A stretch of 64,000 bases of DNA from Lama guanicoe. Its lineage: Eukaryota. This document shows, piece by piece, positions 21,001 through 63,400 of this stretch (position 1 is its first letter; the number at the start of each line of letters is the position of its first letter). The notes beneath the pieces are model-generated. The model ran no database searches and was not told the DNA's origin. It worked only from the letters and a program-made list of their open reading frames with translations. The stretch covers positions 12,247,413 to 12,311,412 of the forward strand of contig MU053934.1 of assembly GCA_013239625.1 (NCBI GenBank). The letters run 5' to 3'. The position numbers and the translations under genes are program-made.

Positions 21001-23000
21001 CGCTGGGCTGGGAGTTCCTGGCATCCACGCGCCTCACCTCAGAGCTCAACTTCCTGCTTCAGGAGATCGACAACTGCTACCATCGGGCGGCCGAGGGCCG
21101 CGCGCCCAAGATCGAGAAGCAGATCCAGTCCAAGGGGCCCGGCATCACGGAGCGCGAGCGGCGCGAGATCATCGAGAACGCAGAGAAGGAGAAGAGCCCT
21201 GAGCAGAACCTGTTCGAGAAGTACCTGGAGCGCCGCGGCCGCAGCAACTTTCTAGCCAAGCTCTACCTAGCGCGGCACCTGCTCATCCTGCTGCTCAGCG
21301 TGGCGCCCATCTCTTACCTGTGCACCTACTACGCCACCCAGAAGCAGAACGAGTTCACCTGCGCGCTGGGCGCAGCCCCGGGAGGCGGGGGCCCGGCGGT
21401 GCGCGTCAGCTGCAAGCTGCCGTCCGTGCAGCTGCAGCGCATCGTGGCGGGCGTGGACATCGTGCNNNNNNNNNNNNNNNNNNNNNNNNNNNNNNNNNNN
21501 NNNNNNNNNNNNNNNNNNNNNNNNNNNNNNNNNNNNNNNNNNNNNNNNNNNNNNNNNNNNNNNNNNNNNNNNNNNNNNNNNNNNNNNNNNNNNNNNNNNN
21601 NNNNNNNNNNNNNNNNNNNNNNNNNNNNNNNNNNNNNNNNNNNNNNNNNNNNNNNNNNNNNNNNNNNNNNNNNNNNNNNNNNNNNNNNNNNNNNNNNNNN
21701 NGACAACGTGGTGCGGCAGCTGCTGGCCGCTCTCGCCCAGTCCAACCACGACGCCACGCCCACCGTGCGCGACGCGGGCGTGCAGACCGTGGACCCCAGT
21801 GCCAACCCCGCCGAGCCCGACGGCGCCGCCGAGCCGCCGGTGGTCAAGCGGCCCCGCAAGAAGATGAAGTGGATCCCCTCCAGCAACCCGCTGCCCCAGC
21901 CCTTCAAGGAGCCGCTGGCCATCATGCGCGTGGAGAACAGCAAGGCGGAGAAGCCCAAGCCCGTACGCCGCAAGACGGCCACGGACACGCTGATCGCGCC
22001 GCTGCTGGACGCGGGCGCGCGCGCCGCGCACCACTACAAGGGCGGCGGGGGCGACGCGGGGCCCGCCCCAGACAAGAAGCACGCCCGCCACTTCTCCCTG
22101 GACGTGCACCCTTACGTCCTGGGCACCAAGAAGGCGAAGCCCGAGGCCGTACCCGCCGCGCTGCCCGCCTCCCGGAGCCAGGACGGCGGCTTCCTGTCCC
22201 AGGCGGAGGAGTGCGCGCTGGGCCTGACCTCAGCACCCACCGCAGGTAAGGGCGGGCCGAGGGCGGGGCGGAGCCGGGTGGGCGGGGCTGGAGCGGAGGG
22301 CGGCCCCTGGAGGCCGCAGGGAAGGGAGGACGACCCCAACAATGCTCCCCAGACGGCTTGCACCTGGGAGCTGTTTGAAAGACGTTAAGGACTGAGCCAG
22401 CTGGATGGAAGCAGGGACGGGCAGGCGGGACCCTGGAGGGCCCTGTGAAACAGACGGGATGAAGGCTGGGCCGCGGGCTGGCGGGGACACAGTAAGGTGG
22501 TAACGTTGAGAAGGTTCTGGAAATGGGCGCTGCTGCTCCTGGGCGAGTCCACCCAGCCAGGCCGCTGAGTCCCAGCCGCCCAGGTGAGGGGAGGGGACCG
22601 GAAGGCGGGGTAGAGAGGGAGGCCTGCACAGGCTCTGTGCTCTGGGCTGTTTGCAGACGCGCCCTTGCCGGAGAAGGAAATCCTGTTCCCAGCAGAGCCA
22701 GCCCTGGCCGCACTTCCCTCGGGGGGCCCTTTTCACGTCTGCTCGCCCCCTGCAGCCCCCGCCACGGCCCCGCTGTCCCCAGCCAGCCTGAGTAAGGCTG
22801 ACCCTCTGGCCATTCTGAGCCGCAACGCCACCCACCCGCTGCTGCACATCAGCACCCTATACGAGGCCCGGGAGGAGGAGGACGGGGCCCCACGAGCACC
22901 TCCGGACGTGGGCGGCCTCATCACCATCCCTCCCCCACAGCAGATCCTCATCGCCACATTCGACGAGCCAAGGACAGTAGTGAGTACCGTGGAGTTCTGA
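14660..23000 (+). CDS. PANX2: Pannexin-2 (large-pore channel)
   Basis: Exons 14660-14885 (MHHLLEQSADMATALLAGEKLRELILPG...FTKNFA), 20812-22245 (EEPIYCYTPHNFTRDQALYARGYCW..., interrupted by N run 21466-21701) and 22657-23000 (DAPLPEKEIL...DEPRTVVSTVEF*). Canonical splice sites with phase 1/1 introns. Confidence 0.97.
16934..17385 (+). mobile_element. Non-autonomous Tigger1-derived DNA transposon (TcMar-Tigger; Tigger1a-type internal deletion)
   Basis: Terminal inverted repeats caggcagacctc / gaggcctgcctg, preceded by TA and followed by CA (decayed TA TSD). The interior matches remembered Tigger1 5' (caatatttcaaactttttcattatt, tgtgatcagtgatc) and 3' (gctgaaggctcaga, gcactgggaaacc, tgtgactcgctttattg) ends. 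Confidence 0.85.
17670..18005 (-). mobile_element. MLT1 (ERVL-MaLR) solo LTR fragment
   Basis: taacaaatgaccacaaacttagtggctcaaa...gaatttatcat...cagaagtctgaa...ggcccacccagataatc is characteristic of MLT1 LTRs. Confidence 0.7.
21466..21701. other. Assembly gap (236 N) inside PANX2 exon 2
   Basis: Run of n characters; the reading frame is preserved across it. Confidence 0.99.
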
Positions 23001-32271: not shown

Positions 32272-35200
32272 ATGGACGAGCAGGAGGACCAGCCACCCCG
32301 CGAGGTCAGGGGCCTGGGCCGGGGCACTGGGTCTGGGGTGGCTGTGGGCTCAGGGCTGCGCCAGCTGCCTGCAAGCATGGGGTTCCCCCCCACCATGGCC
32401 TTCCTGGGGTCACTGGCTTCTGTGCATAGAAGAGCTCCACATTCTTGCCTGCGGTGCTCCTGGGCCAGCCCAGGGGACCAGGCCGGGCACCTTGAGAGTG
32501 GGCCGCATGTCAGGTGGTCGACGTGGGGAGGCCTTTAGTCCCGGGGCACGTGGCAGATGGGTCCCAGGAGTTCCAGGCATTGGAAGAGCCACCAGGCAAA
32601 TCCCGGGCTGACCCCGGAGAGGGCGGTCATCCCAGCTACAGTGTTCCCCTTCTTTCTGCAGGCTGACCCAGAACCCGTCGTGACATCAGGGGGTTCGGAG
32701 GTGGTGCCCAGGGTGCTTCCTGGAGAGCCCCAGAACCTGTGTGCGTGCTCCCTGAGGTCACTGTGCTGGGCGGGAGGGGCGGCAGCTTCCCAGCCAGCTG
32801 GGGCTCAGACTGGGTGCCCTCCCGAGTTTGTGGTGAACGAGGGGCCCCTGGCCTGCCCTGGGGTGTAGGGGAGGGGGCTCTTGAGCACAAGTGGTCCTGA
32901 GGCTCAGTCCTTCAGAGCCCCCCAGGGCCCCCAGCAGCCTGGGTGCCTCCTCGGGGGCAGAGCTTGCCAAGGCCCAGGCCCCTTTCCTCAGGGAGGGGCC
33001 AGGAGGGACCCCCTGCGTGTCCAGGTTCCACAGGGCAGCACGGCCCCACCCAGTGCCCAGGGAGCCCCGGCTGCTCGGCGGCGGGCGTCCCCGAGCTGGG
33101 CCTCGCTGTCCCTGCAGCTGACGTGGACGCCTTCAAGCTGCTCCTGGAGATGAAGCTGAAGAGGAGGCGCGCGCGGCCCAGCCTGCCGCGTACGGTGACC
33201 GAGCTGGTGGCCGAGGATGGGAGCAGGGTGTACGTGGTGGGCACGGCCCACTTCAGCGATGACAGCAAGAAGGACGTGGTGAAGGTGAGGCTGCCACGCC
33301 CATCTGACCTCAGGCCAGGCCCTGACAGCCTTGGGTGTTCTCCTCCCTGGGGACGAGCAAACCTGCTTAGTCATTTCCGCTGATAGTTGCCTGAAGCCCT
33401 GAGTTGTTGCAGCAGCAGCTGAGTTGGTGGCAGGGCCGCCCAGGGGGTGGGGGCCTCTGGGTGTGGCGTGGGCCCTGCCCGCAGGGCCGTGGGGAGCCGG
33501 CATGTCCCTCGCAGACCATCCGGGAGGTGCAGCCCGACGTGGTGGTGGTGGAGCTCTGCCAGTACCGTGTGTCCATGCTGAAGATGGACGAGCGCACGCT
33601 GCTGCGGGAGGCCAAGGAGCTCAGCCTGGAGAAGCTGCAGCAGGCCGTGAGGCAGGTGCGGCCCTCCCAGCCGGCTACGCCAGGCTGGGCCTGTGGGGGC
33701 CTGGGGCGTGCCGGGCTCTGCCCACCTGGCAGCCGCACAGCCCCCTGGGCACAGGGCCTGGGGCAGGCCTCGCCTTCCCAGCGGTACAGAGGCATCCCGC
33801 TCCCTGGGCTCTGTCTGGTCAAGGGCCGTTCCCCCTGGCTTGTGGGACAGGGGCAGTTTTCAGACCCGGGAGAGAGAATGGATGACCCCCTACCCCAAGG
33901 CAGGAGCTGACCAGGGGCCCCGAGGACCCCGGGTGTGCTGAACAGGTCACTAGGGGTGGGGGTGGGGGTGGGGGTCTCGGGATCATGTGGCAAGGCCTCC
34001 TGCCCAGAGCTGTCACCCCCACGGCATCTCCCTGGGTACAGGACCCGAGTCCACTCACAGTGACAGGTGCCCTGAGGAGGATGTGGGCAGATGGGGTGGG
34101 AGTCTGGGCTGGAGGGGTGAGAGGGGAAGGGGCATCCATGGGGCAGAGGCCAGGCAGCTGGTCCAAGATGGTGTGGCCCCAAGGTGGCCCAGCTCTGGGA
34201 AGTTTGTTCAAAAGGCCTCTGCGTATCCACAGTGTGTGGGCGCCCACTGCAAGGCCCTGCTGGACGTCGGCACGGCCCTCACTAGCCCCTGGCTGTGGGC
34301 ACTGGGCACCGTGCTGCTGGCTGACTCAGGCCCGCTCTCCCTGCAGAACGGGGTCATGTCTGGACTCATGCAGATGCTTCTGCTGAAGGTGTCAGCCCAC
34401 ATCACTGAGCAGCTGGGCATGGCCCCTGGCGGCGAGTTCAGGGAGGCTTTCAAGGAGGTGGGCCTGGGCCCGGCCGGGGAGGGGGCTCCACCCTCGGGAG
34501 CTGCCCCTGGGGCTCAAGGCTCCCCAACCGACACCAGCCTCTGCCCAGGCCAGCAAGGTGCCTTTCTGCAAGTTCCACCTGGGCGATCGGCCCATCCCTG
34601 TCACCTTCAAGAGGGCCATCGCCGCACTCTCCTTCTGGCAGAAGGTCAAGCTGGCCTGGGGCCTGTGTTTCCTGTCGGACCCGATCAGGTAGGACCACTC
34701 AGCCTCCTGACAGGCGTCCCTCTTTTTCTTGGGCTGAACCTCCCCGCCCCTTCCTTCTGCCCTGATCCCAGATAGAAGGTGCCCCCGCCCCTGCCCGGGG
34801 CCAACAGCACCAGTGTCCTGCTGGCCGCTGCGTCCCCACGGGCTGGCAGTGCCCCTCTGCCCCCAGCAAGGATGATGTGGAGCGGTGTAAGCAGAAGGAC
34901 CTGCTGGAGCAGATGATGGCAGAGATGATCGGCGAGTTTCCGGACCTGCACCGCACCATCGTCTCTGAGCGCGACGTCTACCTGACCTACATGCTGAGGC
35001 AGGCCGCCCGCCGCCTGGAGCTGCCGCGCGCCTCCGATGGTGAGGCCCGGCTGCCGGGCGGGCCTCTGGGGATGGGTGGGACGGGCAGTCACTGAAGGGT
35101 TGCTCCCCCTACAGCCGAGCCCAGGAAGTGCGTCCCCTCCGTGGTGGTGGGTGTCGTGGGCATGGGCCACGTCCCCGGCATCGAGAAGAACTGGACCACT

Positions 35201-35522
35201 GACCTCAACATCCAGGAGATCATGACGTGAGTGCCACCCACCCACTCCTCGCGCCCCCACACGCAGAGCTGGCAGCCGTGCCCAGACTGGGGGCTGGGGA
35301 TCACGCATCCCCGAACCAGGCCCAGCCCACCCTCCCTCCCCCAGCGTGCCCCCGCCGTCCGTCTCCGGCAGAGCGTCCCGCCTGGCCCTGAAGGCTGCCT
35401 TCTTGGGCCTCCTGGGCTACGGCCTGTACTGGATGGGGCGCCGCGCCACCAGCCTGGTCCTGTCTCTGCCCGCCGCCCAGTACTGCCTGCAGAAGGCGTC
35501 CGAGGTCTGGCCGCGCAAGTAG
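32272..35522 (+). CDS. TRABD: TraB domain-containing protein (about 377 aa, C-terminal membrane anchor)
   Basis: Exons 32272-32304, 32662-32740, 33118-33284, 33515-33655, 34347-34457, 34549-34688, 34867-35039, 35115-35226, 35345-35522 (1134 nt, all phases consistent). TraB motifs VYVVGTAHFS, VVVELC, LGDRPI, IVSERD and VVGVVGMGHVPGI are present. Confidence 0.96.
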
Positions 35523-35654
35523 GAAGGACAGAGGGAGCCACCACACCCGAGAGGACCGCCACAGTTGCTCCGGTGTCACAGCCAAGGGGCTCCTGGGTGC
35601 CACCTGCCATGGGGGTCCAGTCCTAGCCTCGCCTGCCCTCCCTCAACCCACCCG

Positions 35655-35660
35655 AATAAA
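35655..35660 (+). terminator. TRABD proximal polyadenylation signal
   Basis: AATAAA about 130 nt after the stop codon. Confidence 0.7.
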
Positions 35661-36647
35661 GAATTATTTAATCGTCTGAGCGCAGGCTTCCCAGAGCCCC
35701 CACCGCCCCCTCTGCTCAGGGCCCTCAGGAAGGTCACGGCGGCAGGATGACCTGGCGGGAGAGGGGCTGAGGCTCCCCCACACCCTCTGGCCCCAGGTAG
35801 AACGTGTGGGCCACAGCCGGCCATCGCTCACCTCACTGTGCCTTCTCTCCGCCAGTAGGGGCTTCTCATGGTGGGTTCTGGGCCAGCATGTTGGGAAGGG
35901 CAGGGTGGCCCCACAAAGCCTTTGGGTGCGGCTCCTCGGGGCACCCCCCGCAGAGGGTGGCTTGGCCAAGCTTGGCGGCCCTGGATGTGCGCCAGCAAAG
36001 CTCTGTCTGCAGAGATTGTGTTTTTGGCTTTTAAAAATGTCTGAAACTTTTTTACTCAGGTAATTTTAACTTAAAACAAACTGAAGCAAATGTCAGGAAA
36101 TACAAGCCTTAACTCCACTTGGGGCAAAGAGAGCATCTTTGTCTTAGAGTCTCAGCTCCAAGAGGATGAGCGTGTGGAGAGGGTCGGCTTGGGCCGCAGG
36201 GAGCCAGGCCGGCCTCCTGGCAGTGGGGCCGGGGTTGCAGCCCTCTGGGGCATGCGCCCGCCTGGGCCGCGGTGGATCGAACCTGCTCCCGGTGCGTCCG
36301 GTGGAGGCACCTTGGGTCGCCCCGCCCTCAGTGGATGGACGGCCAGTGTCCTCGGGGCCCTCCACCGTGCATGTGAGCCCACCTTGGGCTGGGACTGGTT
36401 GGCCCAGGACCAAGCTGGCCCCACACAGCATTTCCACCCATTCATCGCCTGTGTGCGCAGTCTCCTGGTCACCTGTTTACGACGAAGCCTCTGCACCCGG
36501 TCTGGGGCCCAGGGTTCACATCTGATTGTGTTTGTGTTGACTCGGTGTCTGCCTGAACCCGGTGAAGCCCACAGCATGCGCTGGGGGGCCTCGGGCTGGA
36601 CCGTGACTGTCGTTCGCACGCTCGTGTGTGCGCCTCTAAGAAGCTGA

Positions 36648-36653
36648 AATAAA
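36648..36653 (+). terminator. TRABD distal polyadenylation signal
   Basis: AATAAA followed by U/GU-rich sequence (tttggaagcctgtttggtgacgtgtg). Confidence 0.7.
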
Positions 36654-37616
36654 GCCTACTTTTGGAAGCCTGTTTGGTGACGTGTGCAGATGGGACTCAG
36701 TGGCAAGGGCAGGGCTCCCCAGGCCGTGGGCCCAGGCTGGGCGCACCCGCGCCCTCACCCTCGGTCCCCGCCCTGCTCAGCCCCCAACCCTGGCATGTGG
36801 GAGGGGAGGAGGTGGCGAGTCCAGCAATCTAGACGAAACTGTGGGGACCAGTGGCTAAGGTTTTCCCAGGAGGACGACAGCGAGCCTGGAGTGGGGCGTG
36901 GGCCGTTCCAGGGGCGCAGCAGGAGGCTGGCGGGGCTGGGGGCCCCTTCACCGTCTCTGCCCCAGGAGGCCCAGCTCTCCCTTCATGCTGGGTCTTCCGC
37001 ACTCTCCTGCCTCCTCTGCCCTGGGCCAGCACTGATGGCTCGCAATGGGCAGGGGGCTCCTGAGCCTCCCGAGACTGAGGTCCTCTCCACAGGTCCAGGC
37101 GGCGCTGCTGGAACCCTGAGGCCTGGCTACATGCATGGGAGAGGGAGGGCCGGCAGGCACCCACAGGTCTGCACCCTGCAGGCCTCTCCTGGCGAGGACC
37201 CGCCTGGGTCCCTGCCCCCAGTGGTCTAGGGAGGAGGGCAGAGGACAAGTCCCTTCCAGTCCCATGTTAGGAGAGGCCAGCTGGGCTGGGCAAGAAGGCG
37301 GGACAGCCCAGGTAGACACTCCAAGGGCAGCAGGTGAGATCCACGTTGGACCCATGGGGGAGAGGGGGTACCTGGGGGCAGCAGGAGGAGCCAAGGAATC
37401 AAAGGCCTGGCAGAGGGCTGGGGGCTGGCACATGCTTGGAGCCCAAGGGACAGCCACTTCCAGAACAGATGAAGCCTGAAGTGGGTATGGCCTGAGGTGA
37501 GGCGACAGTGGCTGGCCGACAGTTTATTTATCATCTGCTGGACTGTCCACTGGCCCTTCTTGGGCTCTGGTCCCGGTCACCTGGAGAGCACTGACCTCCT
37601 GGGACGTCTCTTACAG

Positions 37617-39216
37617 GGAGGGGCTGCTCTCAGATCTGGGTAGAGAACCAGAGGGGCCCCAGGGGTGTGTCCACCGTCCAGCCAAGGGAGCCAGCACCGC
37701 TTCCAGGTGAGCAGCCTGCAGCGTGGGGGCTGCAGAGACAGCTGGCATGCCGCTGTGGCAGAAACAAGACACTACTGTTCGAGGCTGGCAGGGCAAGGGC
37801 CAGGCCGGGCACTTGCCTCCCAGAGGCCATCCTCAGCCCACTCACACCTGGTAGGGACATGTTCTCTGAGGTTGTCTACAGTCAGGAAGAGCGAGGGGAA
37901 ACTCAAACGTCCACCTCTAAGGGAACAAACAAAGACGCCTAGGACACAAGTTAGGTACAAAATTATATGCATTGAATTGTGGGCCACTGGCCTGAGGCCT
38001 GGGGAGTTACTTTGATATGCACCCTATTTCTGAGAATTGGAATTTATTACAATGCAAGTTCGTATTATAGTGACAAGCAGAAAAACAAAAAGGTTTCATT
38101 TTTTCAAATACACAAAGTGCTTAGGGGAGAGTGGACACCTCTCTCCTTTTAGACAGGAGTGGAGGCCTGCATGATGTGCCCAGGCACTGCCAGCACAGAT
38201 GAAGGTGACGTGCCGCCCCTGCCCCCAAGTTTCCTGTGACGTGTATGACAGTGGTTGGACAGTGATTCAGTCGCGGACAGGGGAGGCTGCTGGATTTTGA
38301 GAGGTGCTGGCAGGAGTACAAACAGCTTCAGAGACTTGGGAGGGAGGAGGGCTGTACTGCCTGAGGGGAACAGAGAATGAGCGGCCAGGTATCCCAGGCC
38401 TTGTCCTAGGGGCCAGAGCTTGAGCCCCACCAAGAACACAGGGCAGGGGTGGCAGGAGGCGGCAAGGGACTGCCAGCAGGTGCAGACCTGAGCCTGGGTG
38501 CCTCTCTCCTGCAGGTGACCACTGGTTAGGGCTGGCGCACATCTCGGGCCTGACCACCCAGCCTGGCCTGCACACCAAGCTGATGGTGGACCTGCGGGAC
38601 ACGGACAACACTGTGGGCCCATTATGACAAATTCTGCGTGGACACGGGAGACCAGTTGTACAGGCTCATTCTCAGCCTTTGCTTGGCACCGCAGGTGAGT
38701 GCCTGGGGGCTCTCGGGCAACCTCCCCGTCCCGCCCCCAGGCACCCTGCTTTGCTGACGTGTTTTCCAGGCAAGGGGCTAGAGGGAAGGAGGGGACCCAG
38801 AGACTCCAACTTCCCAGCCCACACCTGCCAGCCTTCATTCTCTGGGCAAGGATATTGCACCTCCCTTGGAGGTCCCTCATGGCTGGGAAACATCATGGGG
38901 GCGCAGCGCCAGAGGAGTCTCTGCCCACGCTGCCCCACGCGCAGGGGACGCGGTCCCGGATTTGGGCCGCAGCGACAAGCAGGAGGGCCGCGGCTTCAGC
39001 ACGCTGGACCGCGACCTCAACAGCGGCGCCCCTGCGTGGACGGCGCGCACACCTTCGCCAGCTGTAGCCGCGATCGCTCGGGCGCCGGCGGGTGGTACAG
39101 CGACCTCGGCCAGGCCAACCTCAACGCGCAGGGGCCGACTCAAGCGTGCGCTTTGCCCCAGCCGACCACCCACCGGCCCTGCGCTCCGCGCCGGCCTCAT
39201 TAAATGTTAAGCCCGG
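37617..39216 (+). pseudogene. Unprocessed (intron-containing) fibrinogen C-terminal domain pseudogene, ANGPTL5-like
   Basis: Four collinear exon remnants (/ = frameshift). 37617-37706 GRGCSQIWVENQRGPRGVSTVQP/GAST/FQ; 38229-38342 VSCDVYDSGWTVIQSR/QGRLLDFERCWQEYKQ/FRDLG; 38515-38694 GDHWLGLAHISGLTTQPGLHTKLMVDLRDTDNT/WAHYDKFCVDTGDQLYRLILSLC/GTAG; 38945-~39216 DAVPDLGRSDKQEGRGFSTLDRDLNSG/PCVDGAHTFASCSRDRSGAGGWYSDLGQANLNA.../ALRSAPASLNVKP. Intact splice sites at 37615-16, 37707, 38513-14, 38695 and 38943-44. Multiple frameshifts and lost Cys/Trp residues. Confidence 0.88.
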
Positions 39217-39679
39217 CTGCCTGGGGGTCGTCTTTGTGGGGAGGGGCCAGGAAACGGCGGAGCTCAGCTGCAGAGGCACCTGCCCAAGTGGGACGGGCCA
39301 AGGGAAGTCTGGGAGGCCGGGTAGCTCAGCAGCGAGGCCACAGGCAAGGCTGCCAGGGCTGGGAGGGTCATCCCCGCAGTGCTGACCTGCTGGAACCCTT
39401 GAAGCCCACCAGGCGTCCCCTCTGGCTGTGAGCTCATTGAGGGCCCTCAAAAACCTAGTCCCACCAGATTCAAAGTGTGGGTAGGACAGCAGAGTCAGGG
39501 GGCAAGGTCAGGAGGGCCTGGGCCTGAGGAAGAGGGAGGGGTGACACCAGGCTCAGGCCTGGTCTCCTAGGCAGTGAGGAAGGAGGCTGGGAACAGGGTA
39601 CTCCGCCAGCAGGCCAGGTGGGGAAGACACCGGGTGGGCCCAGGTGGAAGGGAATCCATCAGGCTGCAGGGGGCATTCC

Positions 39680-40290
39680 GGAGTGCTGAGTACCTACCAG
39701 GACCTCACCACGTTGTCCCCGTTGTCTGTGTCACCCTAACCCCACACAGAAGGTAGTCATCATTTTTTATTTTGGGGTTTGTTTTTTTTTTTTTTTGACC
39801 GATAGGACCTCCAGGTGGTCCTCAAAAACCTTTATTGGATGGTTCTTTCCAGAGAGGGAGATGCAAGCCAACGGACGGGGCTGAGGGCAGGCATGGCTTC
39901 CAGGTCCCCACACCAGGGGGGACAAACGGTGGGCAGGACGCTGTCTGCTGTGTCCATGTCACTTCTCCAGGGGCACGCATTGAGCAGCTTCTCGATCAGG
40001 CCCATGTGGGCCAGCAGCATGTGGCAGCAGCAGTAGCGCTTCAGGCCCAGCGCTTCCAGGGCATTCCCCTCGGTGTGCTCGGCCTGCAGCAGCCCCAGGT
40101 AGGCCTCCCACTTGTTGCCACAATCTTGCTACACGTGAAACAGCACACAGGGATGATCAAGGCGGCAGCTGAGCAATCAGCTGACCAGCTTGGTAGAGTC
40201 ATTGTTTATCTCAGCAACGAGGACCCCAAGCTGGAGGCAGCTGAGGGGTTCCCCGAGGTCACACGGCGACAGGGGCAGAGATGGTTCTCA
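39680..40290 (+). mobile_element. MIR SINE split in two by the POLR2L retrocopy (about 39680-39770 and 40192-40290)
   Basis: Left part ...caccctaaccccacacagaaggtag and right part ...tttatctcagcaacgaggacc...ccccgaggtcacacggcgacaggggcagagatggttc join into a continuous MIR-like sequence. Confidence 0.55.
39782..40191 (-). pseudogene. POLR2L: Processed pseudogene of RNA polymerase subunit RPB10 (POLR2L)
   Basis: Minus strand 40160-39959 reads (TTG)[64 protein letters not shown], versus RPB10 [67 protein letters not shown]. No intron, ATG changed to TTG, two 1-nt deletions, AATAAA (39831-39836, minus strand) and poly(A) remnant (T run 39782-39796). Confidence 0.93.
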
Positions 40291-41496
40291 TGAGGTCTGG
40301 GAAGCCTCGTTGTGGCCCCAGGAGAAAGTTCAGAGGCGGCCCCTTGAAGGTAGGTGTGGAATCGGGGCTCCTGGAAGAAAGAGCAGCGCCAGCCAGGAGG
40401 GAGCTGGAGAGTTTGTCAAGGGTCTCGGGTTTCAGTCTGAGCCCACATGGGCAGGGGATTGGGAGCCCCTCCAAGAACCACTCTTTCCATGCAGGCATCA
40501 GCGGGGTCACCTAGTGGGGAGGAGTCTCCACAAGGCTCCTCTGAACTGAATTCGAATCATTTTGCAACACTGACTTGCCCCACCTCCTCACCTGGGGGCC
40601 CCTTCAAGGCCAAGCTTGACCATCCCCACCCTGCGCCCACCTCAGCCTCCTGCACATCTCCAAGGAGTTTCTCTGGGCCAGGAGCTGCTCTGGGGAACTG
40701 GTGCCCAGATCATCAGAGCTCCTGCTCTCGCAAAGTGAGGGTGAGGAAAGACATACAAGAAACAGGAAAATAAGGGAATGAGCTCATTTCAGAGAGAAGT
40801 GCAAGGAAAAACACAGGGTGACAGGAGGCACGGCGGGCAAGGCAGGCAGCAGGGCGGTACGGGATCTAGCATGCCTGTGCGGAATCGCGCTCCAGGCGGG
40901 GATAGCGCAGGCGCAAAGGCCCCGCACTAGGGAGGCGCCCGGCCCGGGGCTGGCAGGCTCCAGGCTTTGGCCTCCTCCTCGGGCTCTGCCTGGCCCACAG
41001 CTGTTCCCATGAATTCTCCCAGATCCAGACAAATGTTGTCCTCTTTCCCTCCTGTCCTGTGCGCGGCTAGCAAAAACACAATCCAGGTCCAGACCCTCAG
41101 CACAGCGTAGCGGTGGGGCTGCCCTTGGCTTCCCCCCCGGAGTTGGGGGCACCCTGGAGGTCCACTGGGGACGTCATTCGGCACAGTCACCGGCTTGGAG
41201 CGCTCAGCCTGGTCTGGCAGGTGCCTCCCAGGGCGGACTTCCAGGGACCTGACGGCTGCGGCGCAGGGCAGTCATTCCGGACTGCCCTGTCTCAACTGCC
41301 CACTCCAGCCCTCAGCCGCAGCTCCGCGGAACCGGCCCTCGCAGTCCCCCGAGGCGGGACCTGGCGCAGAAGCGGACAGACGGTGCGACCAATCAGAGCT
41401 AGGCTTCCGGGGCGCGGCCCACGACAACTGGGCGGCGGGGAGCAGGGCGGGGCTTCCTGTCGGGGCAAAGAGGCTTCCGCCGCAGCGGCGCCTCGG

Positions 41497-54083
<12,587 letters not shown>

Positions 54084-60400: not shown

Positions 60401-63400
60401 CTCTCCACCTCCAGCCCCCGCCTCTCCACCCCTCCCACTCCCTTCTGTGGGGTCTGCTGCCCACCTGGTGCCAGGCCAGGAAGAACCCTCATCAACCCCT
60501 CTCCAGTACACAGGATGCTCAGAGCTCAGGCTCTGGTACACCTACCCCTTCCGAGCAGGAGAGGAGCTCAGAGGCCACCGAGTGCAGGAACCTCAGGTCC
60601 TGCTGCCCTGGGGCTACTGCTCAGGCAGGACCTGGCTGTCCGCCATCCAGCCAGCCCCATAGGAGAGAAGGGAGGGAAGGGCAAGGAAAGGCCCCGGAGC
60701 CCGAGGTGCCCCCACACCTTCTCCTCCTTGCTGATGGAGCTGTGGCGCGCCACCCTCTCCATCCGTCCCACGTAGATGGCACAGTCCTTCTCTATGTCCT
60801 TCAACTCCTCCAGGGAGAAAATCACCGAGATGCGAGGGACAGGAACATCAGAGCAGCAGAGGTAATGCTGCTGAGCAGGAGAACCTGCAGTGAGCCCAGA
60901 GAAACTTGGACCCACATCCTGCTCTGCCTCCGTTTCTGGTGACCGGTGTGTACGCCGGCTTTCTTAGAAAGTGCATTCCTCACTGCCATCCTCCACAGCT
61001 CTGAGGACACCACAGACAGGCTGTGCAAGGTCTCTGCCCAGGCCAAGGCTGCCCTGTGGCAGAGGTCACGTCTGCCTCCAAGTGACTCTTCAGAACGTGG
61101 GACACGCCCACACCCACTCACTGAGGCCCACCCAGATTGGACAGGCCCACCGCCGGCCTCTCCCCATAGCTGAGCCCCAATATGTAGCCCCACCCTGCCC
61201 TGGAGCCCCACTTCCCGACAGCCAACCTCCCAGAGGCTCCTGAGAGCCCACCAGCATCAGGCCCTTCCCTGCACCTGCTGCTCCCACCTGGCCCTGAGCC
61301 TGTCCTGGCTGCTCCAGTCTGTTCTCAGCCCCACACTCGGCCAGCTGCTGCCCCAGATCTGGCCTGTACCTGGGTATTCCGCTGCCTAGAACCCGTGTCC
61401 ACATGCCCCACCCACCTCCTTCTGCTGGGGCATCAGGCAGCACCTCCTCAAAGGGCCAGCCTGTCCACAGCCCATCACAGTCACCTGGCCTTCCTCCACC
61501 AGGTCTCAGCCACATGGACACCAGTGCAGGCCTCTGTTCCAGAGCACAGCCAAACCCTGTGACCCCTTCACAAGTGCCCCCCGGACCAGGGGGACATGAT
61601 TCCCTAAACAGCCACATCCATCTTCCCGCTGACACAGCCCACCCCTGTTGCACTGGGGCATCTCCAGGGTGGAGGAGGTGGGGAGAAGCCCACTGCCCCC
61701 TTGGTCTCTGAAATGCCTTCAGCTTCTCTTCTGGTCTTGGAAAGAGCACTCAGAAACTCAACAGAACTACTAGTGAAACTCCAGGGGAAACTGAGGTCAC
61801 CACAACCTGGTCCAGCCCAGCTGACCCAGAGCTAAGGACACCCGGCCAGGCCGCAGGGGGTGGGGGGAGGGCACACGCAGAGGGGCAAGAGGGGCAAGAG
61901 GGGCGGGGGGGATGAGACGGCACACTGGGTGGTGCAGGGCAGCGCCCCCTCACCCGGGGGCAGCAGAGCTTCAGCAGGTTGATGGTCTTTCCGCAGACAT
62001 ACACGTCATGAGCAACGTGTTTCAAGAACACGGGCACGCAGTCCTCCACCTCTTTGGAAATGAGCACGTAGCCATGGGTCCAGTAAAACTTGTCTACACG
62101 TGGGACCAGAAACATAAGATCTGTGTCCAGCGACAGCCCTGACCCACCCGAAGGCGTGGAGGCCCAGCCTGAACGCCGGCCACCACCTACCTCTGAAGCC
62201 CAAGTACTCCTGGTTCACCTGGATCATGAACTCTCCATAAACATCTCTGAAGACCCCACTGTACACCCAGTCGTGAATGAACCTGCGGGGTGGGCGGGCC
62301 AGCAGTGAGGTGCTTGGTAGGCAACCCGGGCAGGAGCGTAGGAGCGCGGCAACGAGGACAGAGCGCAGCCCCACCCCTCGCCCGGCCCCACCCCAGGCCC
62401 CACCGCGTGTAGGGCTCGCAGCTGGTCTTCAGCAGAGACAGCAGCACCGGGTAGTGTTCGTTGCTGCAGTTGTCCAGGGCCTCCTGGTAGAGGTAGGAGA
62501 GCAGCTTCACGCCCTGGAGACGACAAGGAGAGGGGCTCAGCACACACAACACTGCAGGATCCAGCCCCCCACCCATCCTCCAAGCTCAGCCACTGCCCCG
62601 CCCCCCAACAGGGGCTGCCTACTCAGGAATCCCGAGCTCACAGTGGGGAAGGCAGCCGCAGCCCTGGGCTCCCCTCCACCAGCGCCCGGGAGTGCAGTGC
62701 CAGTGCCGACACCACAGAGCTCAGCCAGGTACCTAGACACAAAGGCCGGTGAGATCAGGCGAGCAGGACGTGTCCCAGGTCCTCCTCTGCCTGTCTGCAT
62801 GGTCCAGCTTTAAAACCACCTGCACCTCAAGGACCTCAGACTGGAGCCTCCTGACAGACTCCTCCCAGGGCGCCCACGCATCGCCACCTCCTTCCCAAGT
62901 TTGGCCAAGACTGCGTCCCGGAGTCCACAACCCTGCCCCAACCCTGCAGCTCTGCCCTGAGACCTCTCCAGCACTCACCACCTCGCCCAGGTCACCACCT
63001 CCTCTGTCCTGGATGGCCCCTAGCCCCCTGCACCCCGCTGCGGCACAGCCCCTGACAGCACCCTCCAGAGCTCCCCAGGCTGCCTACAACAACTCCTCTT
63101 GAACTGAACCCACCTCCACTCAACCCTAGCCCATCATTTTCTGGCTCCAGATGGCACCTGCCAGCAGACACACTGCCTGGTGTTCACTAACCAGCTTGTG
63201 GGTGCCAGGGGCCAGGTCTGTCTATAGGGAGGAACCCTGTGTGCCTTTCAGGCAGGAGCCGCTGACCCAAGGCAGGGCCCGCTTGGTGGGCTGCCAACAG
63301 ACAGCACCTAGCCCCTCATGAACTCATCTGGGTCAAAGGCTATCCAGACGCCCAGCAGCAGGGCTGCTTTCATAGGCCCGCCACCGCCCAGCAAGCCCCA

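What the first reader, a model, noticed from the sequence alone, without database searches (positions are those of the whole stretch)
37617..39216. Hidden ANGPTL5-like fibrinogen-domain gene relic between TRABD and SELENOO
Seen in sequence: four exon-like blocks in order on the + strand, most with intact AG/GT sites, whose frameshift-corrected translations cover a whole fibrinogen C-terminal (FReD) domain. The motifs are CSQI...P.G...VQP.GAS..FQ | VSCD...GWTVIQSR...DFERCWQEYK..F.DL | GDHWLGL.HI...L.VDL.D....WAHYDKF.V...YRL.L...GTAG | DA...FSTLDRD...PC...SCS...GGWYSD.GQANLN...LRS...L.VKP. Established knowledge: these are canonical FReD motifs. Compared with remembered human ANGPTL5 ([64 protein letters not shown]), the last exon shares the distinctive insert with an extra Cys (RP-C...SCS). 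Inference: this is a distinct ANGPTL5 paralogue, not ANGPTL5 itself, now pseudogenised (at least six frameshifts, in-frame stops such as 38298-38300, lost Cys/Trp, degraded exon-2 splice sites). I know of no such gene at the human locus, so it may record an angiopoietin-like secreted-factor gene that was lost in some mammals and is intact in others. No single ORF in the track shows it.
Basis: partly seen in the sequence, partly recalled or inferred. Interest (0 to 1): 0.92.

Follow-up and report, generated by a model that had tools for sequence, protein, structure and literature searches.

The report
Dead ANGPTL5-like fibrinogen-domain gene relic
Between TRABD and SELENOO this (camelid-like) genome carries the decayed remains of a small secreted fibrinogen-domain gene, a little-known relative of ANGPTL5 that is still predicted intact in carnivores, where its product is an abundant dog saliva protein of unknown function.

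Summary
Four collinear + strand blocks (37617-37706, 38229-38342, 38515-38694, 38945-39214) cover positions 38-261 of a 273-aa protein. That protein has a signal peptide and a fibrinogen-related domain (FReD), and NCBI names it "angiopoietin-related protein 5-like" (here "L").

In a six-frame scan of the whole window with an L profile, the eight best hits are exactly these blocks, in order. They sum to 214 bits, against 33 bits for a true-ANGPTL5 profile.

Apparently full-length L proteins are predicted in Carnivora, pangolins, lemurs, tree shrew, afrotherians, a marsupial, a frog, ray-finned fishes and sharks. True ANGPTL5 is their nearest known family and shares the two-cysteine insert. The dog protein (LOC607055) is abundant in saliva, with function "not reported".

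The window copy is dead:
- 7-8 frameshifts
- both splice sites of one exon destroyed
- the stop codon lost
- 10 of 40 positions invariant from shark to mammal changed, including a disulfide Cys, a Trp and a Ca-site Asp

Fourteen DNA runs hold 97-100% of its 31-mers, so assembly error is unlikely.

This is a unitary pseudogene of an uncharacterised gene, of moderate interest.

The parts
36974..37122 (+). Possible relic of exon 1 (signal peptide). 'SPFMLGL..' lies at 36974-37022. 'PQVQAALLEP' lies at 37087-37116 and is followed by TGA where intact genes have Gln-Gly and the donor. This part is weak.
   Evidence: hmmsearch of an N-terminal profile against 15 upstream segments: best E=0.008, ending exactly at LLEP. 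Frameshift-aware DP scores are not above shuffled controls.
37617..37706 (+). AG (37615-16) and GT (37707-08) are intact. Two 1-nt losses lie near 37685 and 37699. The exon is 90 nt where 92 are expected.
   Evidence: L-HMM 38-62, E=7e-5.
38229..38342 (+). Exon 3 relic (block 2): 'VSCDVYDSGWTVIQSRTGEA.LDFERCWQEYKQ.FRDLG'. About 8 nt are lost near 38289 and 2 nt at 38326. The in-frame acceptor reads AA (38227-28), and the only AG lies 1 nt downstream. The donor is GG (38343-44).
   Evidence: L-HMM 69-88 and 88-105, E=3e-3 and 4e-6.
38515..38694 (+). Exon 4 relic (block 3): 'DHWLGLAHISGLTTQPGLHTKLMVDLRDTDNT.WAHYDKFCVDTGDQLYRLILSL.LGTA'. AG (38513-14) and GT (38695-96) are intact. About 5 nt are lost near 38613 and 1 nt near 38680.
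   Evidence: L-HMM 106-144 and 143-170, E=2e-13 and 1e-5.
38945..39214 (+). Exon 5 relic (block 4): 'DAVPDLGRSDKQEGRGFSTLDRDLNS.RPCVDGAHTFASCSRDRSGAGGWYSDLGQANLN.AGADSSVRFAPADHPPALRSAPASLNVKP'. The AG (38943-44) is intact. A 1-nt loss near 39025 removes the first insert Cys. About 16 nt are lost near 39126. The ancestral stop is not preserved, and the frame runs on to 39385.
   Evidence: L-HMM 172-204, 202-244 and 237-261.
33165..36653 (+). Upstream neighbour: TRABD-type exons at about 33.1-35.3 kb, with AATAAA at 36648-36653.
   Evidence: Exon translations such as 'VYVVGTAHFSDDSK', 'TIREVQPDVVVVELCQYRVS', 'FCKFHLGDRPIPVTFKRA', 'SERDVYLTYMLRQAA' and 'VVGMGHVPGIEKNW'. There is a weak Atlas lead to the TraB/ChaN clan. 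Pfam is silent on the single exons.
41494..42072 (+). Downstream neighbour: SELENOO exon 1.
   Evidence: Pfam SelO E=8e-16; translation; named SELENOO hits.

Best explanation
The stretch is a unitary (unprocessed, in-place) pseudogene of a five-exon gene. That gene encodes a short secreted protein made of a signal peptide and one fibrinogen-related domain, with no coiled coil. Databases call it 'angiopoietin-related protein 5-like'; the dog gene is LOC607055.

Its exons 2-5, and probably a remnant of exon 1, still lie in order with their introns between TRABD and SELENOO. The reading frame is broken in every exon, one exon has lost both splice sites, and residues essential to the fold are mutated. 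The copy therefore cannot make the protein.

Shown here:
- homology, collinearity and subfamily
- the list of disabling lesions
- relaxed constraint

Inferred:
- The window comes from a camelid. Its SELENOO exons are 98-99% identical to Camelus bactrianus.
- The locus is orthologous to the predicted intact carnivore genes.
- The ancestral product acted as a secreted, saliva- or mucosa-associated FReD protein.

Subfamily:
- the 3-residue insert before LDFERCW that is peculiar to mammalian L

Introns retained with consensus AG/GT at 6 of 8 sites:
- this shows it is not a retrocopy
- the raccoon-dog isoform P0008, which reads through the exon 4-5 intron, also aligns across the window's intron, which indicates DNA-level orthology

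Lesions:
- 7-8 frameshifts, AG>AA, GT>GG, and the stop lost

Relaxed constraint:
- 18 of 94 columns invariant in 12 placental L proteins are changed. Intact members show 0-4% (tenrec 9.6%).
- 10 of 40 columns invariant in all L plus ANGPTL5 are changed. These are D41G, S54R, Y57S, M74V, G108R, G179D, D199N, W223G, C228L and W249F.
- The end branches are long, 0.58-0.68.

Reproducibility:
- 14 DNA runs from at least 8 studies hold 0.97-1.00 of 203 sampled 31-mers of 37400-39400
- seven or eight false indels would remove roughly a tenth of the words

The intact gene is real:
- Pfam Fibrinogen_C 173.7 bits
- AlphaFold pLDDT 82.6, with best PDB match the ANGPTL2 FReD at TM 0.87
- dog protein identified by mass spectrometry in saliva and enamel pellicle (PMC3652036, PMC5766244, PMC9388946, PMC7222850)
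Against: - No read-level check of each indel was possible.
The only hint is that dugong L and dugong SELENOO both list the same 192.7-Mb record.
- A few RNA runs hold 7-10% of the words, so some transcription through part of the stretch is possible.
- Whether another intact L copy exists elsewhere in this genome was not tested.
Confidence: 0.9

Rival explanations
1. The gene is functional in this species, and the frameshifts are assembly or consensus errors in a GC-rich region.
For: GC-rich subtelomeric-type sequence (about 62% GC) is prone to indel errors. Six of eight splice sites are intact.
Against: - Runs from at least 8 studies and several organism labels hold 97-100% of the sampled 31-mers.
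- Beyond the indels, two splice sites are mutated.
- Ten universally invariant residues, including a disulfide Cys and the GWW Trp, are substituted. Indel errors cannot explain substitutions.
Confidence: 0.03
2. The relic is no longer a protein gene but has been taken over as non-coding sequence. It could be part of a TRABD read-through or antisense transcript, or part of the SELENOO upstream regulatory region about 2.3 kb away.
For: RNA-labelled runs hold 7-10% of the words of 37400-39400. The stretch sits between a poly(A) signal at 36648 and the SELENOO exon 1 CpG-rich region.
Against: - No evidence of conservation beyond what neutral decay of coding exons would leave.
- Substitutions hit constrained and unconstrained positions alike.
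Confidence: 0.06
3. It is a decayed copy of true ANGPTL5 or of another FReD family (FIBCD1, ficolin, FGL1, angiopoietin), not of the short ANGPTL5-like gene.
For: The best solved-structure hit of one piece is FIBCD1, E=0.0026. NCBI names some partial isoforms 'FIBCD1-like', 'angiopoietin-2-like' or 'angiopoietin-4-like'.
Against: - Profile scores are 214 bits (placental L), 99 (non-placental L), 33 (true ANGPTL5) and 29 (other FReDs).
- All exon rows sit inside the placental L clade, support 100.
- No coiled-coil exon lies upstream.
Confidence: 0.01

Closest known systems
'Angiopoietin-related protein 5-like' genes predicted by NCBI. Examples: dog LOC607055 / UniProt F1P931, grey seal XP_035969662 (P0004), panda, otter, hyena, meerkat, mouse lemur, tree shrew, elephant, tenrec.
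   Same: - The same protein, exon by exon: 55-80% identity per exon.
- The same 3-residue insert before LDFERCW and the same C-x2-C insert.
- The same lack of a coiled coil.
   Different: Those genes are predicted with open frames, and the dog product is detected in saliva. The window copy has 7-8 frameshifts, two dead splice sites and mutated core residues.
ANGPTL5 (angiopoietin-like 5, about 388 aa)
   Same: - It is the nearest characterised family: 40-43% identity and 176-196 bits, against at most 132 bits for any solved FReD.
- It shares the insert with two extra cysteines in the P domain (PMC5237311).
- The two together form a clade, support 97.
   Different: - ANGPTL5 has a long N-terminal coiled-coil region that L lacks.
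- It forms a separate clade, support 100.
- The true-ANGPTL5 profile gives the relic only 33 bits.
- From memory, ANGPTL5 also lies at a different locus.
FReD-only secreted lectin-type proteins (FIBCD1 ectodomain, ficolin heads, tachylectin-5A, MFAP4, FGL1)
   Same: The fold is the same. The intact seal orthologue superposes on FIBCD1, ANGPTL2, FGL1 and M-ficolin at TM 0.85-0.87. The architecture is likewise a signal peptide plus a globular FReD.
   Different: L and ANGPTL5 read C-G after the second P-domain Cys. From memory, FIBCD1 and the ficolins have C-H there, the His of the acetyl-binding site. The placental L C-terminal P domain is shortened and modelled with lower confidence, pLDDT 65-87. 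Ligand binding was not tested.

Membership tests
Fibrinogen C-terminal / FReD domain (Pfam PF00147) | Significant match to the family profile over the whole domain | tested here: met
   Single relic pieces fail Pfam's cut-off; the best is 15.5 bits, E=0.016. Eight collinear pieces match an L-family FReD profile for a sum of 214 bits. The orthologue P0004 scores 173.7 bits on PF00147, covering profile positions 2-203 of 221.
Fibrinogen C-terminal / FReD domain (Pfam PF00147) | Four canonical cysteines (two disulfides) and the Asp-rich Ca site of the P domain | tested here: not met
   C42, C72 and C214 are kept. C228 is Leu. The Ca-site D199 is Asn, and W223 of GWW is Gly. This is expected for a dead copy.
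True ANGPTL5 | N-terminal coiled-coil region encoded upstream of the FReD exons | tested here: not met
   The full-length ANGPTL5 profile gives no hit outside the FReD blocks anywhere in the window.
True ANGPTL5 | Placement inside the ANGPTL5 clade | tested here: not met
   The exon rows fall in the placental L clade (100). The ANGPTL5 clade is separate (100).
ANGPTL5 + ANGPTL5-like group | P-domain insert with two extra cysteines (C-x2/3-C) before the canonical SCS/NCA Cys | tested here: met
   The insert has the same length in the relic. The second Cys is kept ('RPCVDG'). The first falls in the 1-nt deletion near 39025. The feature is described in PMC5237311.
Short 'ANGPTL5-like' gene (LOC607055 type) | Sequence placement, the mammal-specific 3-residue insert before LDFERCW, and five-exon signal-peptide + FReD architecture | tested here: met
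   The exon 1 remnant is only weakly supported.
Short 'ANGPTL5-like' gene (LOC607055 type) | Same genomic position (TRABD-SELENOO interval) in species with the intact gene | not testable with these tools
The only hint is that dugong L and dugong SELENOO both list a 192,749,609-bp record.
Unitary pseudogene | Unprocessed copy (introns kept) with multiple independent disabling lesions | tested here: met
   Introns of 522, 172 and 250 nt are present, with 6 of 8 splice dinucleotides intact. There are 7-8 frameshifts, two splice losses and loss of the stop.
Unitary pseudogene | No functional copy elsewhere in the same genome; lesions confirmed in reads | tested here: inconclusive
   The genome-wide search was not possible.

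The most novel reading that the evidence does not exclude
The short ANGPTL5-like gene is an old gnathostome member of the angiopoietin-like/FReD repertoire that family reviews have overlooked, because no intact copy was found in haplorhine primates or rodents. It survives as a major salivary protein in carnivores and in a patchwork of other mammals. It has been inactivated independently several times: here in a camelid, and apparently in other ungulates, bats, rodents and haplorhine primates. Relics like this one would allow each loss to be dated and related to diet or oral ecology.
Probability: 0.55. Interest if true: 0.55.

Novelty: new member of a known kind. Interest (0 to 1): 0.42.

Why it matters
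This is an ordinary kind of object, a unitary pseudogene, but it points at a gene that has escaped study. The gene encodes a secreted fibrinogen-domain protein that is sister to ANGPTL5 and is conserved from sharks to mammals.

It is among the most abundant proteins in dog saliva, where its function is listed as 'not reported'. It is present in IgE-reactive saliva spots. It was not found among predicted proteins of several large mammalian orders.

The 2017 review of ANGPTL evolution (PMC5237311) treats ANGPTL5 as a single lineage and does not mention a second mammalian gene. The relic gives a dated, locus-anchored record of one loss. It is also a concrete reason to annotate the TRABD-SELENOO interval in other mammals.

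Tried and rejected
- Pfam on eight single pieces: one sub-threshold hit only.
- PDB sequence search with three single pieces: weak hits to FIBCD1 (E=0.0026) and FGL1 (E about 1), plus noise hits to antibodies and a kinase.
Those places were not sent to any search tool afterwards. They were masked in the later BLAST and HMM scans. One local motif scan read the unmasked window and discarded any match within 30 bases of them.
- Looking for fusions of L with TraB or SelO domains in over-long predicted isoforms, as a proxy for synteny: none found.
- Pfam on TRABD exons: no hit. The Atlas gave only a weak TraB/ChaN lead.
Self-BLAST showed almost no young repeats. SELENOO exon identity then pointed to a camelid.
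- Exon 1: frameshift-aware alignment was not better than shuffled controls. A profile search gave one marginal hit.
- The apparent 'EG.AAP.QV' match upstream of exon 3 was judged a chance match in a C-rich tract.
Exons were handled one at a time by reference, or in scripts with X at each break.
- A full tree with ANGPTL1-4, 6 and 7, FIBCD1, ficolins and tenascins could not be built, because their sequences could not be obtained. Bit-score comparison with solved structures stands in for it.

Full report
**Observation**

No mechanical ORF spans them.

Single pieces are too short to be convincing:
- Pfam gives one sub-threshold Fibrinogen_C hit for 38502-38624 (15.5 bits, E=0.016).
- PDB sequence searches give FIBCD1 at E=0.0026 for the same piece and little else.

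The decisive step was an exhaustive phmmer of the 38-residue piece 38511-38624 against 1.84 billion representative proteins. It returned nine proteins of 62-78% identity, with E down to 2e-8.

These are predicted mammalian proteins. NCBI names most of them 'angiopoietin-related protein 5-like'. They come from grey seal, dingo, raccoon dog, mink and giant pangolin.

**Collinearity and significance**

tblastn of the 273-aa seal protein P0004 against the window gives HSPs in protein order over residues 39-261, switching frame seven times. They lie between 37616 and 39190, with E down to 1.6e-17.

I built a profile of 11 placental members and searched it against all 2327 stop-free six-frame segments of the window, with places 40036-40150 masked. 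The eight best hits all lie on the + strand, in 37613-39190. They follow strict profile order (38-62, 69-88, 88-105, 106-144, 143-170, 172-204, 202-244, 237-261) and sum to 214 bits. Every other segment has E>1.

**Anatomy and lesions**

A frameshift-aware alignment, run block by block against four intact proteins, together with the raw sequence, gives the following.

Exon 2, 37617-37706:
- AG and GT are intact.
- Two 1-nt losses lie near 37685 and 37699.

Exon 3, 38229-38342:
- About 8 nt are lost near 38289, and 2 nt at 38326.
- The in-frame acceptor reads AA at 38227-28.
- The donor reads GG at 38343-44.

Exon 4, 38515-38694:
- AG and GT are intact.
- About 5 nt are lost near 38613, and 1 nt near 38680.

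Exon 5, 38945-39214:
- The AG is intact.
- A 1-nt loss near 39025 removes the first cysteine of the insert.
- About 16 nt are lost near 39126.
- The ancestral stop is gone, and the frame stays open to 39385.

A fifth, upstream exon encoding the signal peptide is probably represented by 36974-37122. There 'PQVQAALLEP' at 37087-37116 is followed by TGA where intact genes read Gln-Gly. The support is marginal.

**Relaxed constraint**

Of 94 alignment columns invariant in 12 intact placental proteins and covered by the relic, 18 are changed. Intact members in a leave-one-out control show 0-4% (tenrec 9.6%).

Of 40 columns invariant in all L proteins plus true ANGPTL5, from shark to mammal, 10 are changed. 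These are D41G, S54R, Y57S, M74V, G108R, G179D, D199N (Ca site), W223G, C228L (disulfide) and W249F. The relic's end branches in the tree are also long, 0.58-0.68.

**What family**

A word-indexed search with P0004 shows a coherent group of roughly 260-300-aa proteins, each a signal peptide plus one FReD. Members come from:
- many Carnivora
- two pangolins, mouse lemur, a second lemur, tree shrew
- elephant, dugong, tenrec
- a dunnart and a frog
- gar and several teleosts
- two cartilaginous fishes

True ANGPTL5 (about 388 aa) comes next, at 40-43% identity.

Similarity scores point the same way in both directions:
- P0004 scores 176-196 bits against true ANGPTL5, but at most 132 bits against any solved FReD. 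The solved families include ANGPTL2, tachylectin-5A, angiopoietin-1/2, FIBCD1, FGL1, MFAP4, ANGPTL4/6, tenascins, ficolins and fibrinogen chains.
- Elephant ANGPTL5 scores 184 bits against P0004 and at most 129 bits against the solved set.

The alignment shows that L and ANGPTL5 share a P-domain insert with two extra cysteines. PMC5237311 singles out this feature for ANGPTL5. L lacks the ANGPTL5 coiled-coil region.

In a quick IQ-TREE analysis (47 rows; relic exons 3, 4 and 5 as separate rows with X at each break):
- All three relic rows fall inside the placental L clade (SH-aLRT 100).
- Two of them fall in the carnivore+pangolin subclade (98).
- ANGPTL5 is its own clade (100).
- L plus ANGPTL5 are split from the other FReDs sampled (97).
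- Monophyly of L relative to ANGPTL5 is unresolved.

Profile scores of the relic are 214 bits (placental L), 99 (non-placental L), 33 (true ANGPTL5) and 29 (other FReDs). No coiled-coil exon hit appears upstream.

**The intact gene is real**

- P0004 scores 173.7 bits on Pfam Fibrinogen_C.
- It folds with mean pLDDT 82.6, above 90 over the A and B subdomains and 65-87 over the P subdomain.
- It superposes on the ANGPTL2, FIBCD1, FGL1 and M-ficolin FReDs at TM 0.85-0.87.

The dog product (LOC607055, F1P931, nominal 31.7 kDa) was identified by mass spectrometry:
- in four of five IgE-reactive 2D-gel spots of dog saliva (PMC3652036)
- among the most abundant proteins of healthy dog saliva, with function 'Not reported' (PMC5766244)
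- in the acquired enamel pellicle (PMC9388946)
- in a saliva/serum proteome study (PMC7222850)

I found no paper on its evolution, function or loss.

**Context and species**

SELENOO exon 1 lies at 41494-42072, and further exons follow from 48.1 kb. TRABD-type exons lie at 33.1-35.3 kb, with AATAAA at 36648. A MOV10L1-type helicase exon lies at about 9.0-9.5 kb.

Per-exon identity of SELENOO is 98-99% to the Camelus bactrianus protein, against 74-91% to pig and peccary. The window is therefore from a camelid, probably not that species itself. No L-type protein from any artiodactyl, perissodactyl, bat, rodent, lagomorph or haplorhine primate appeared among the hits. This suggests, but does not prove, further losses.

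**Is it an assembly artefact?**

Fourteen DNA-labelled runs hold 0.97-1.00 of 203 sampled 31-mers of 37400-39400. They come from at least eight studies and six organism labels. Seven or eight spurious indels would remove roughly a tenth of the words, so at most one or two lesions could be assembly-specific. Substitutions at invariant residues and at splice sites cannot be indel errors.

Those places were sent to no search tool afterwards.

**Limits**

Orthologous position and intron phases in species with the intact gene are therefore inferred, not shown.
- The hints for orthology are two. A raccoon-dog isoform that reads through the exon 4-5 intron aligns across the window's intron. Dugong L and dugong SELENOO both list the same 192.7-Mb record.
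- A tree with every vertebrate FReD family could not be assembled.

**Verdict**

This is a unitary pseudogene of the short ANGPTL5-like FReD gene. As an object it is ordinary. Its value is as a pointer to an unstudied, patchily retained secreted protein.

Noticed in passing
window 45914-46369 and 47180-47569 (+), within the AT-rich block at about 44-48 kb: L1 ORF2-like stop-free translations inside SELENOO intron 1. This is the only clearly AT-rich stretch of the window (GC 0.43 against about 0.62).
   Followed up: no
whole window: Almost no young interspersed repeats. Self-BLAST gives 6 HSPs.
   Followed up: partly
window 41518-54071 (+): SELENOO exons are 98-99% identical to the Camelus bactrianus protein, but exon 1 is only about 94% identical. 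The genome is a camelid, probably not that species.
   Followed up: partly
window 38201-38225: Just upstream of relic exon 3, a C-rich tract translates (with two shifts) to 'EG.AAP.QV', which mimics the end of exon 2. It is either chance or a tiny duplication.
   Followed up: no
They lie outside the relic and were left alone.
   Followed up: no
window 21466-21701: A run of 236 N (assembly gap or mask) in the PANX2-side part of the window. It was not touched.
   Followed up: no
proteins P0010/P0015, P0011, P0006 (Logan assemblies, species unknown): Short ORF products carry L-type exon 3-4 sequence with odd substitutions (for example 'GDRWPGLEHI') or intron read-through. They may be further relics of the same gene in other species.
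   Followed up: no
window 61753-62585 (-): Translations typical of TUBGCP6 exons on the minus strand ('VDKFYWTHGYVLISKEVEDCV', 'LYQEALDNCSNEHYPVLLSLLKTSCEPYT'). They were recognised by eye only. Pfam was silent on the one exon sent (62190-62585).
   Followed up: no
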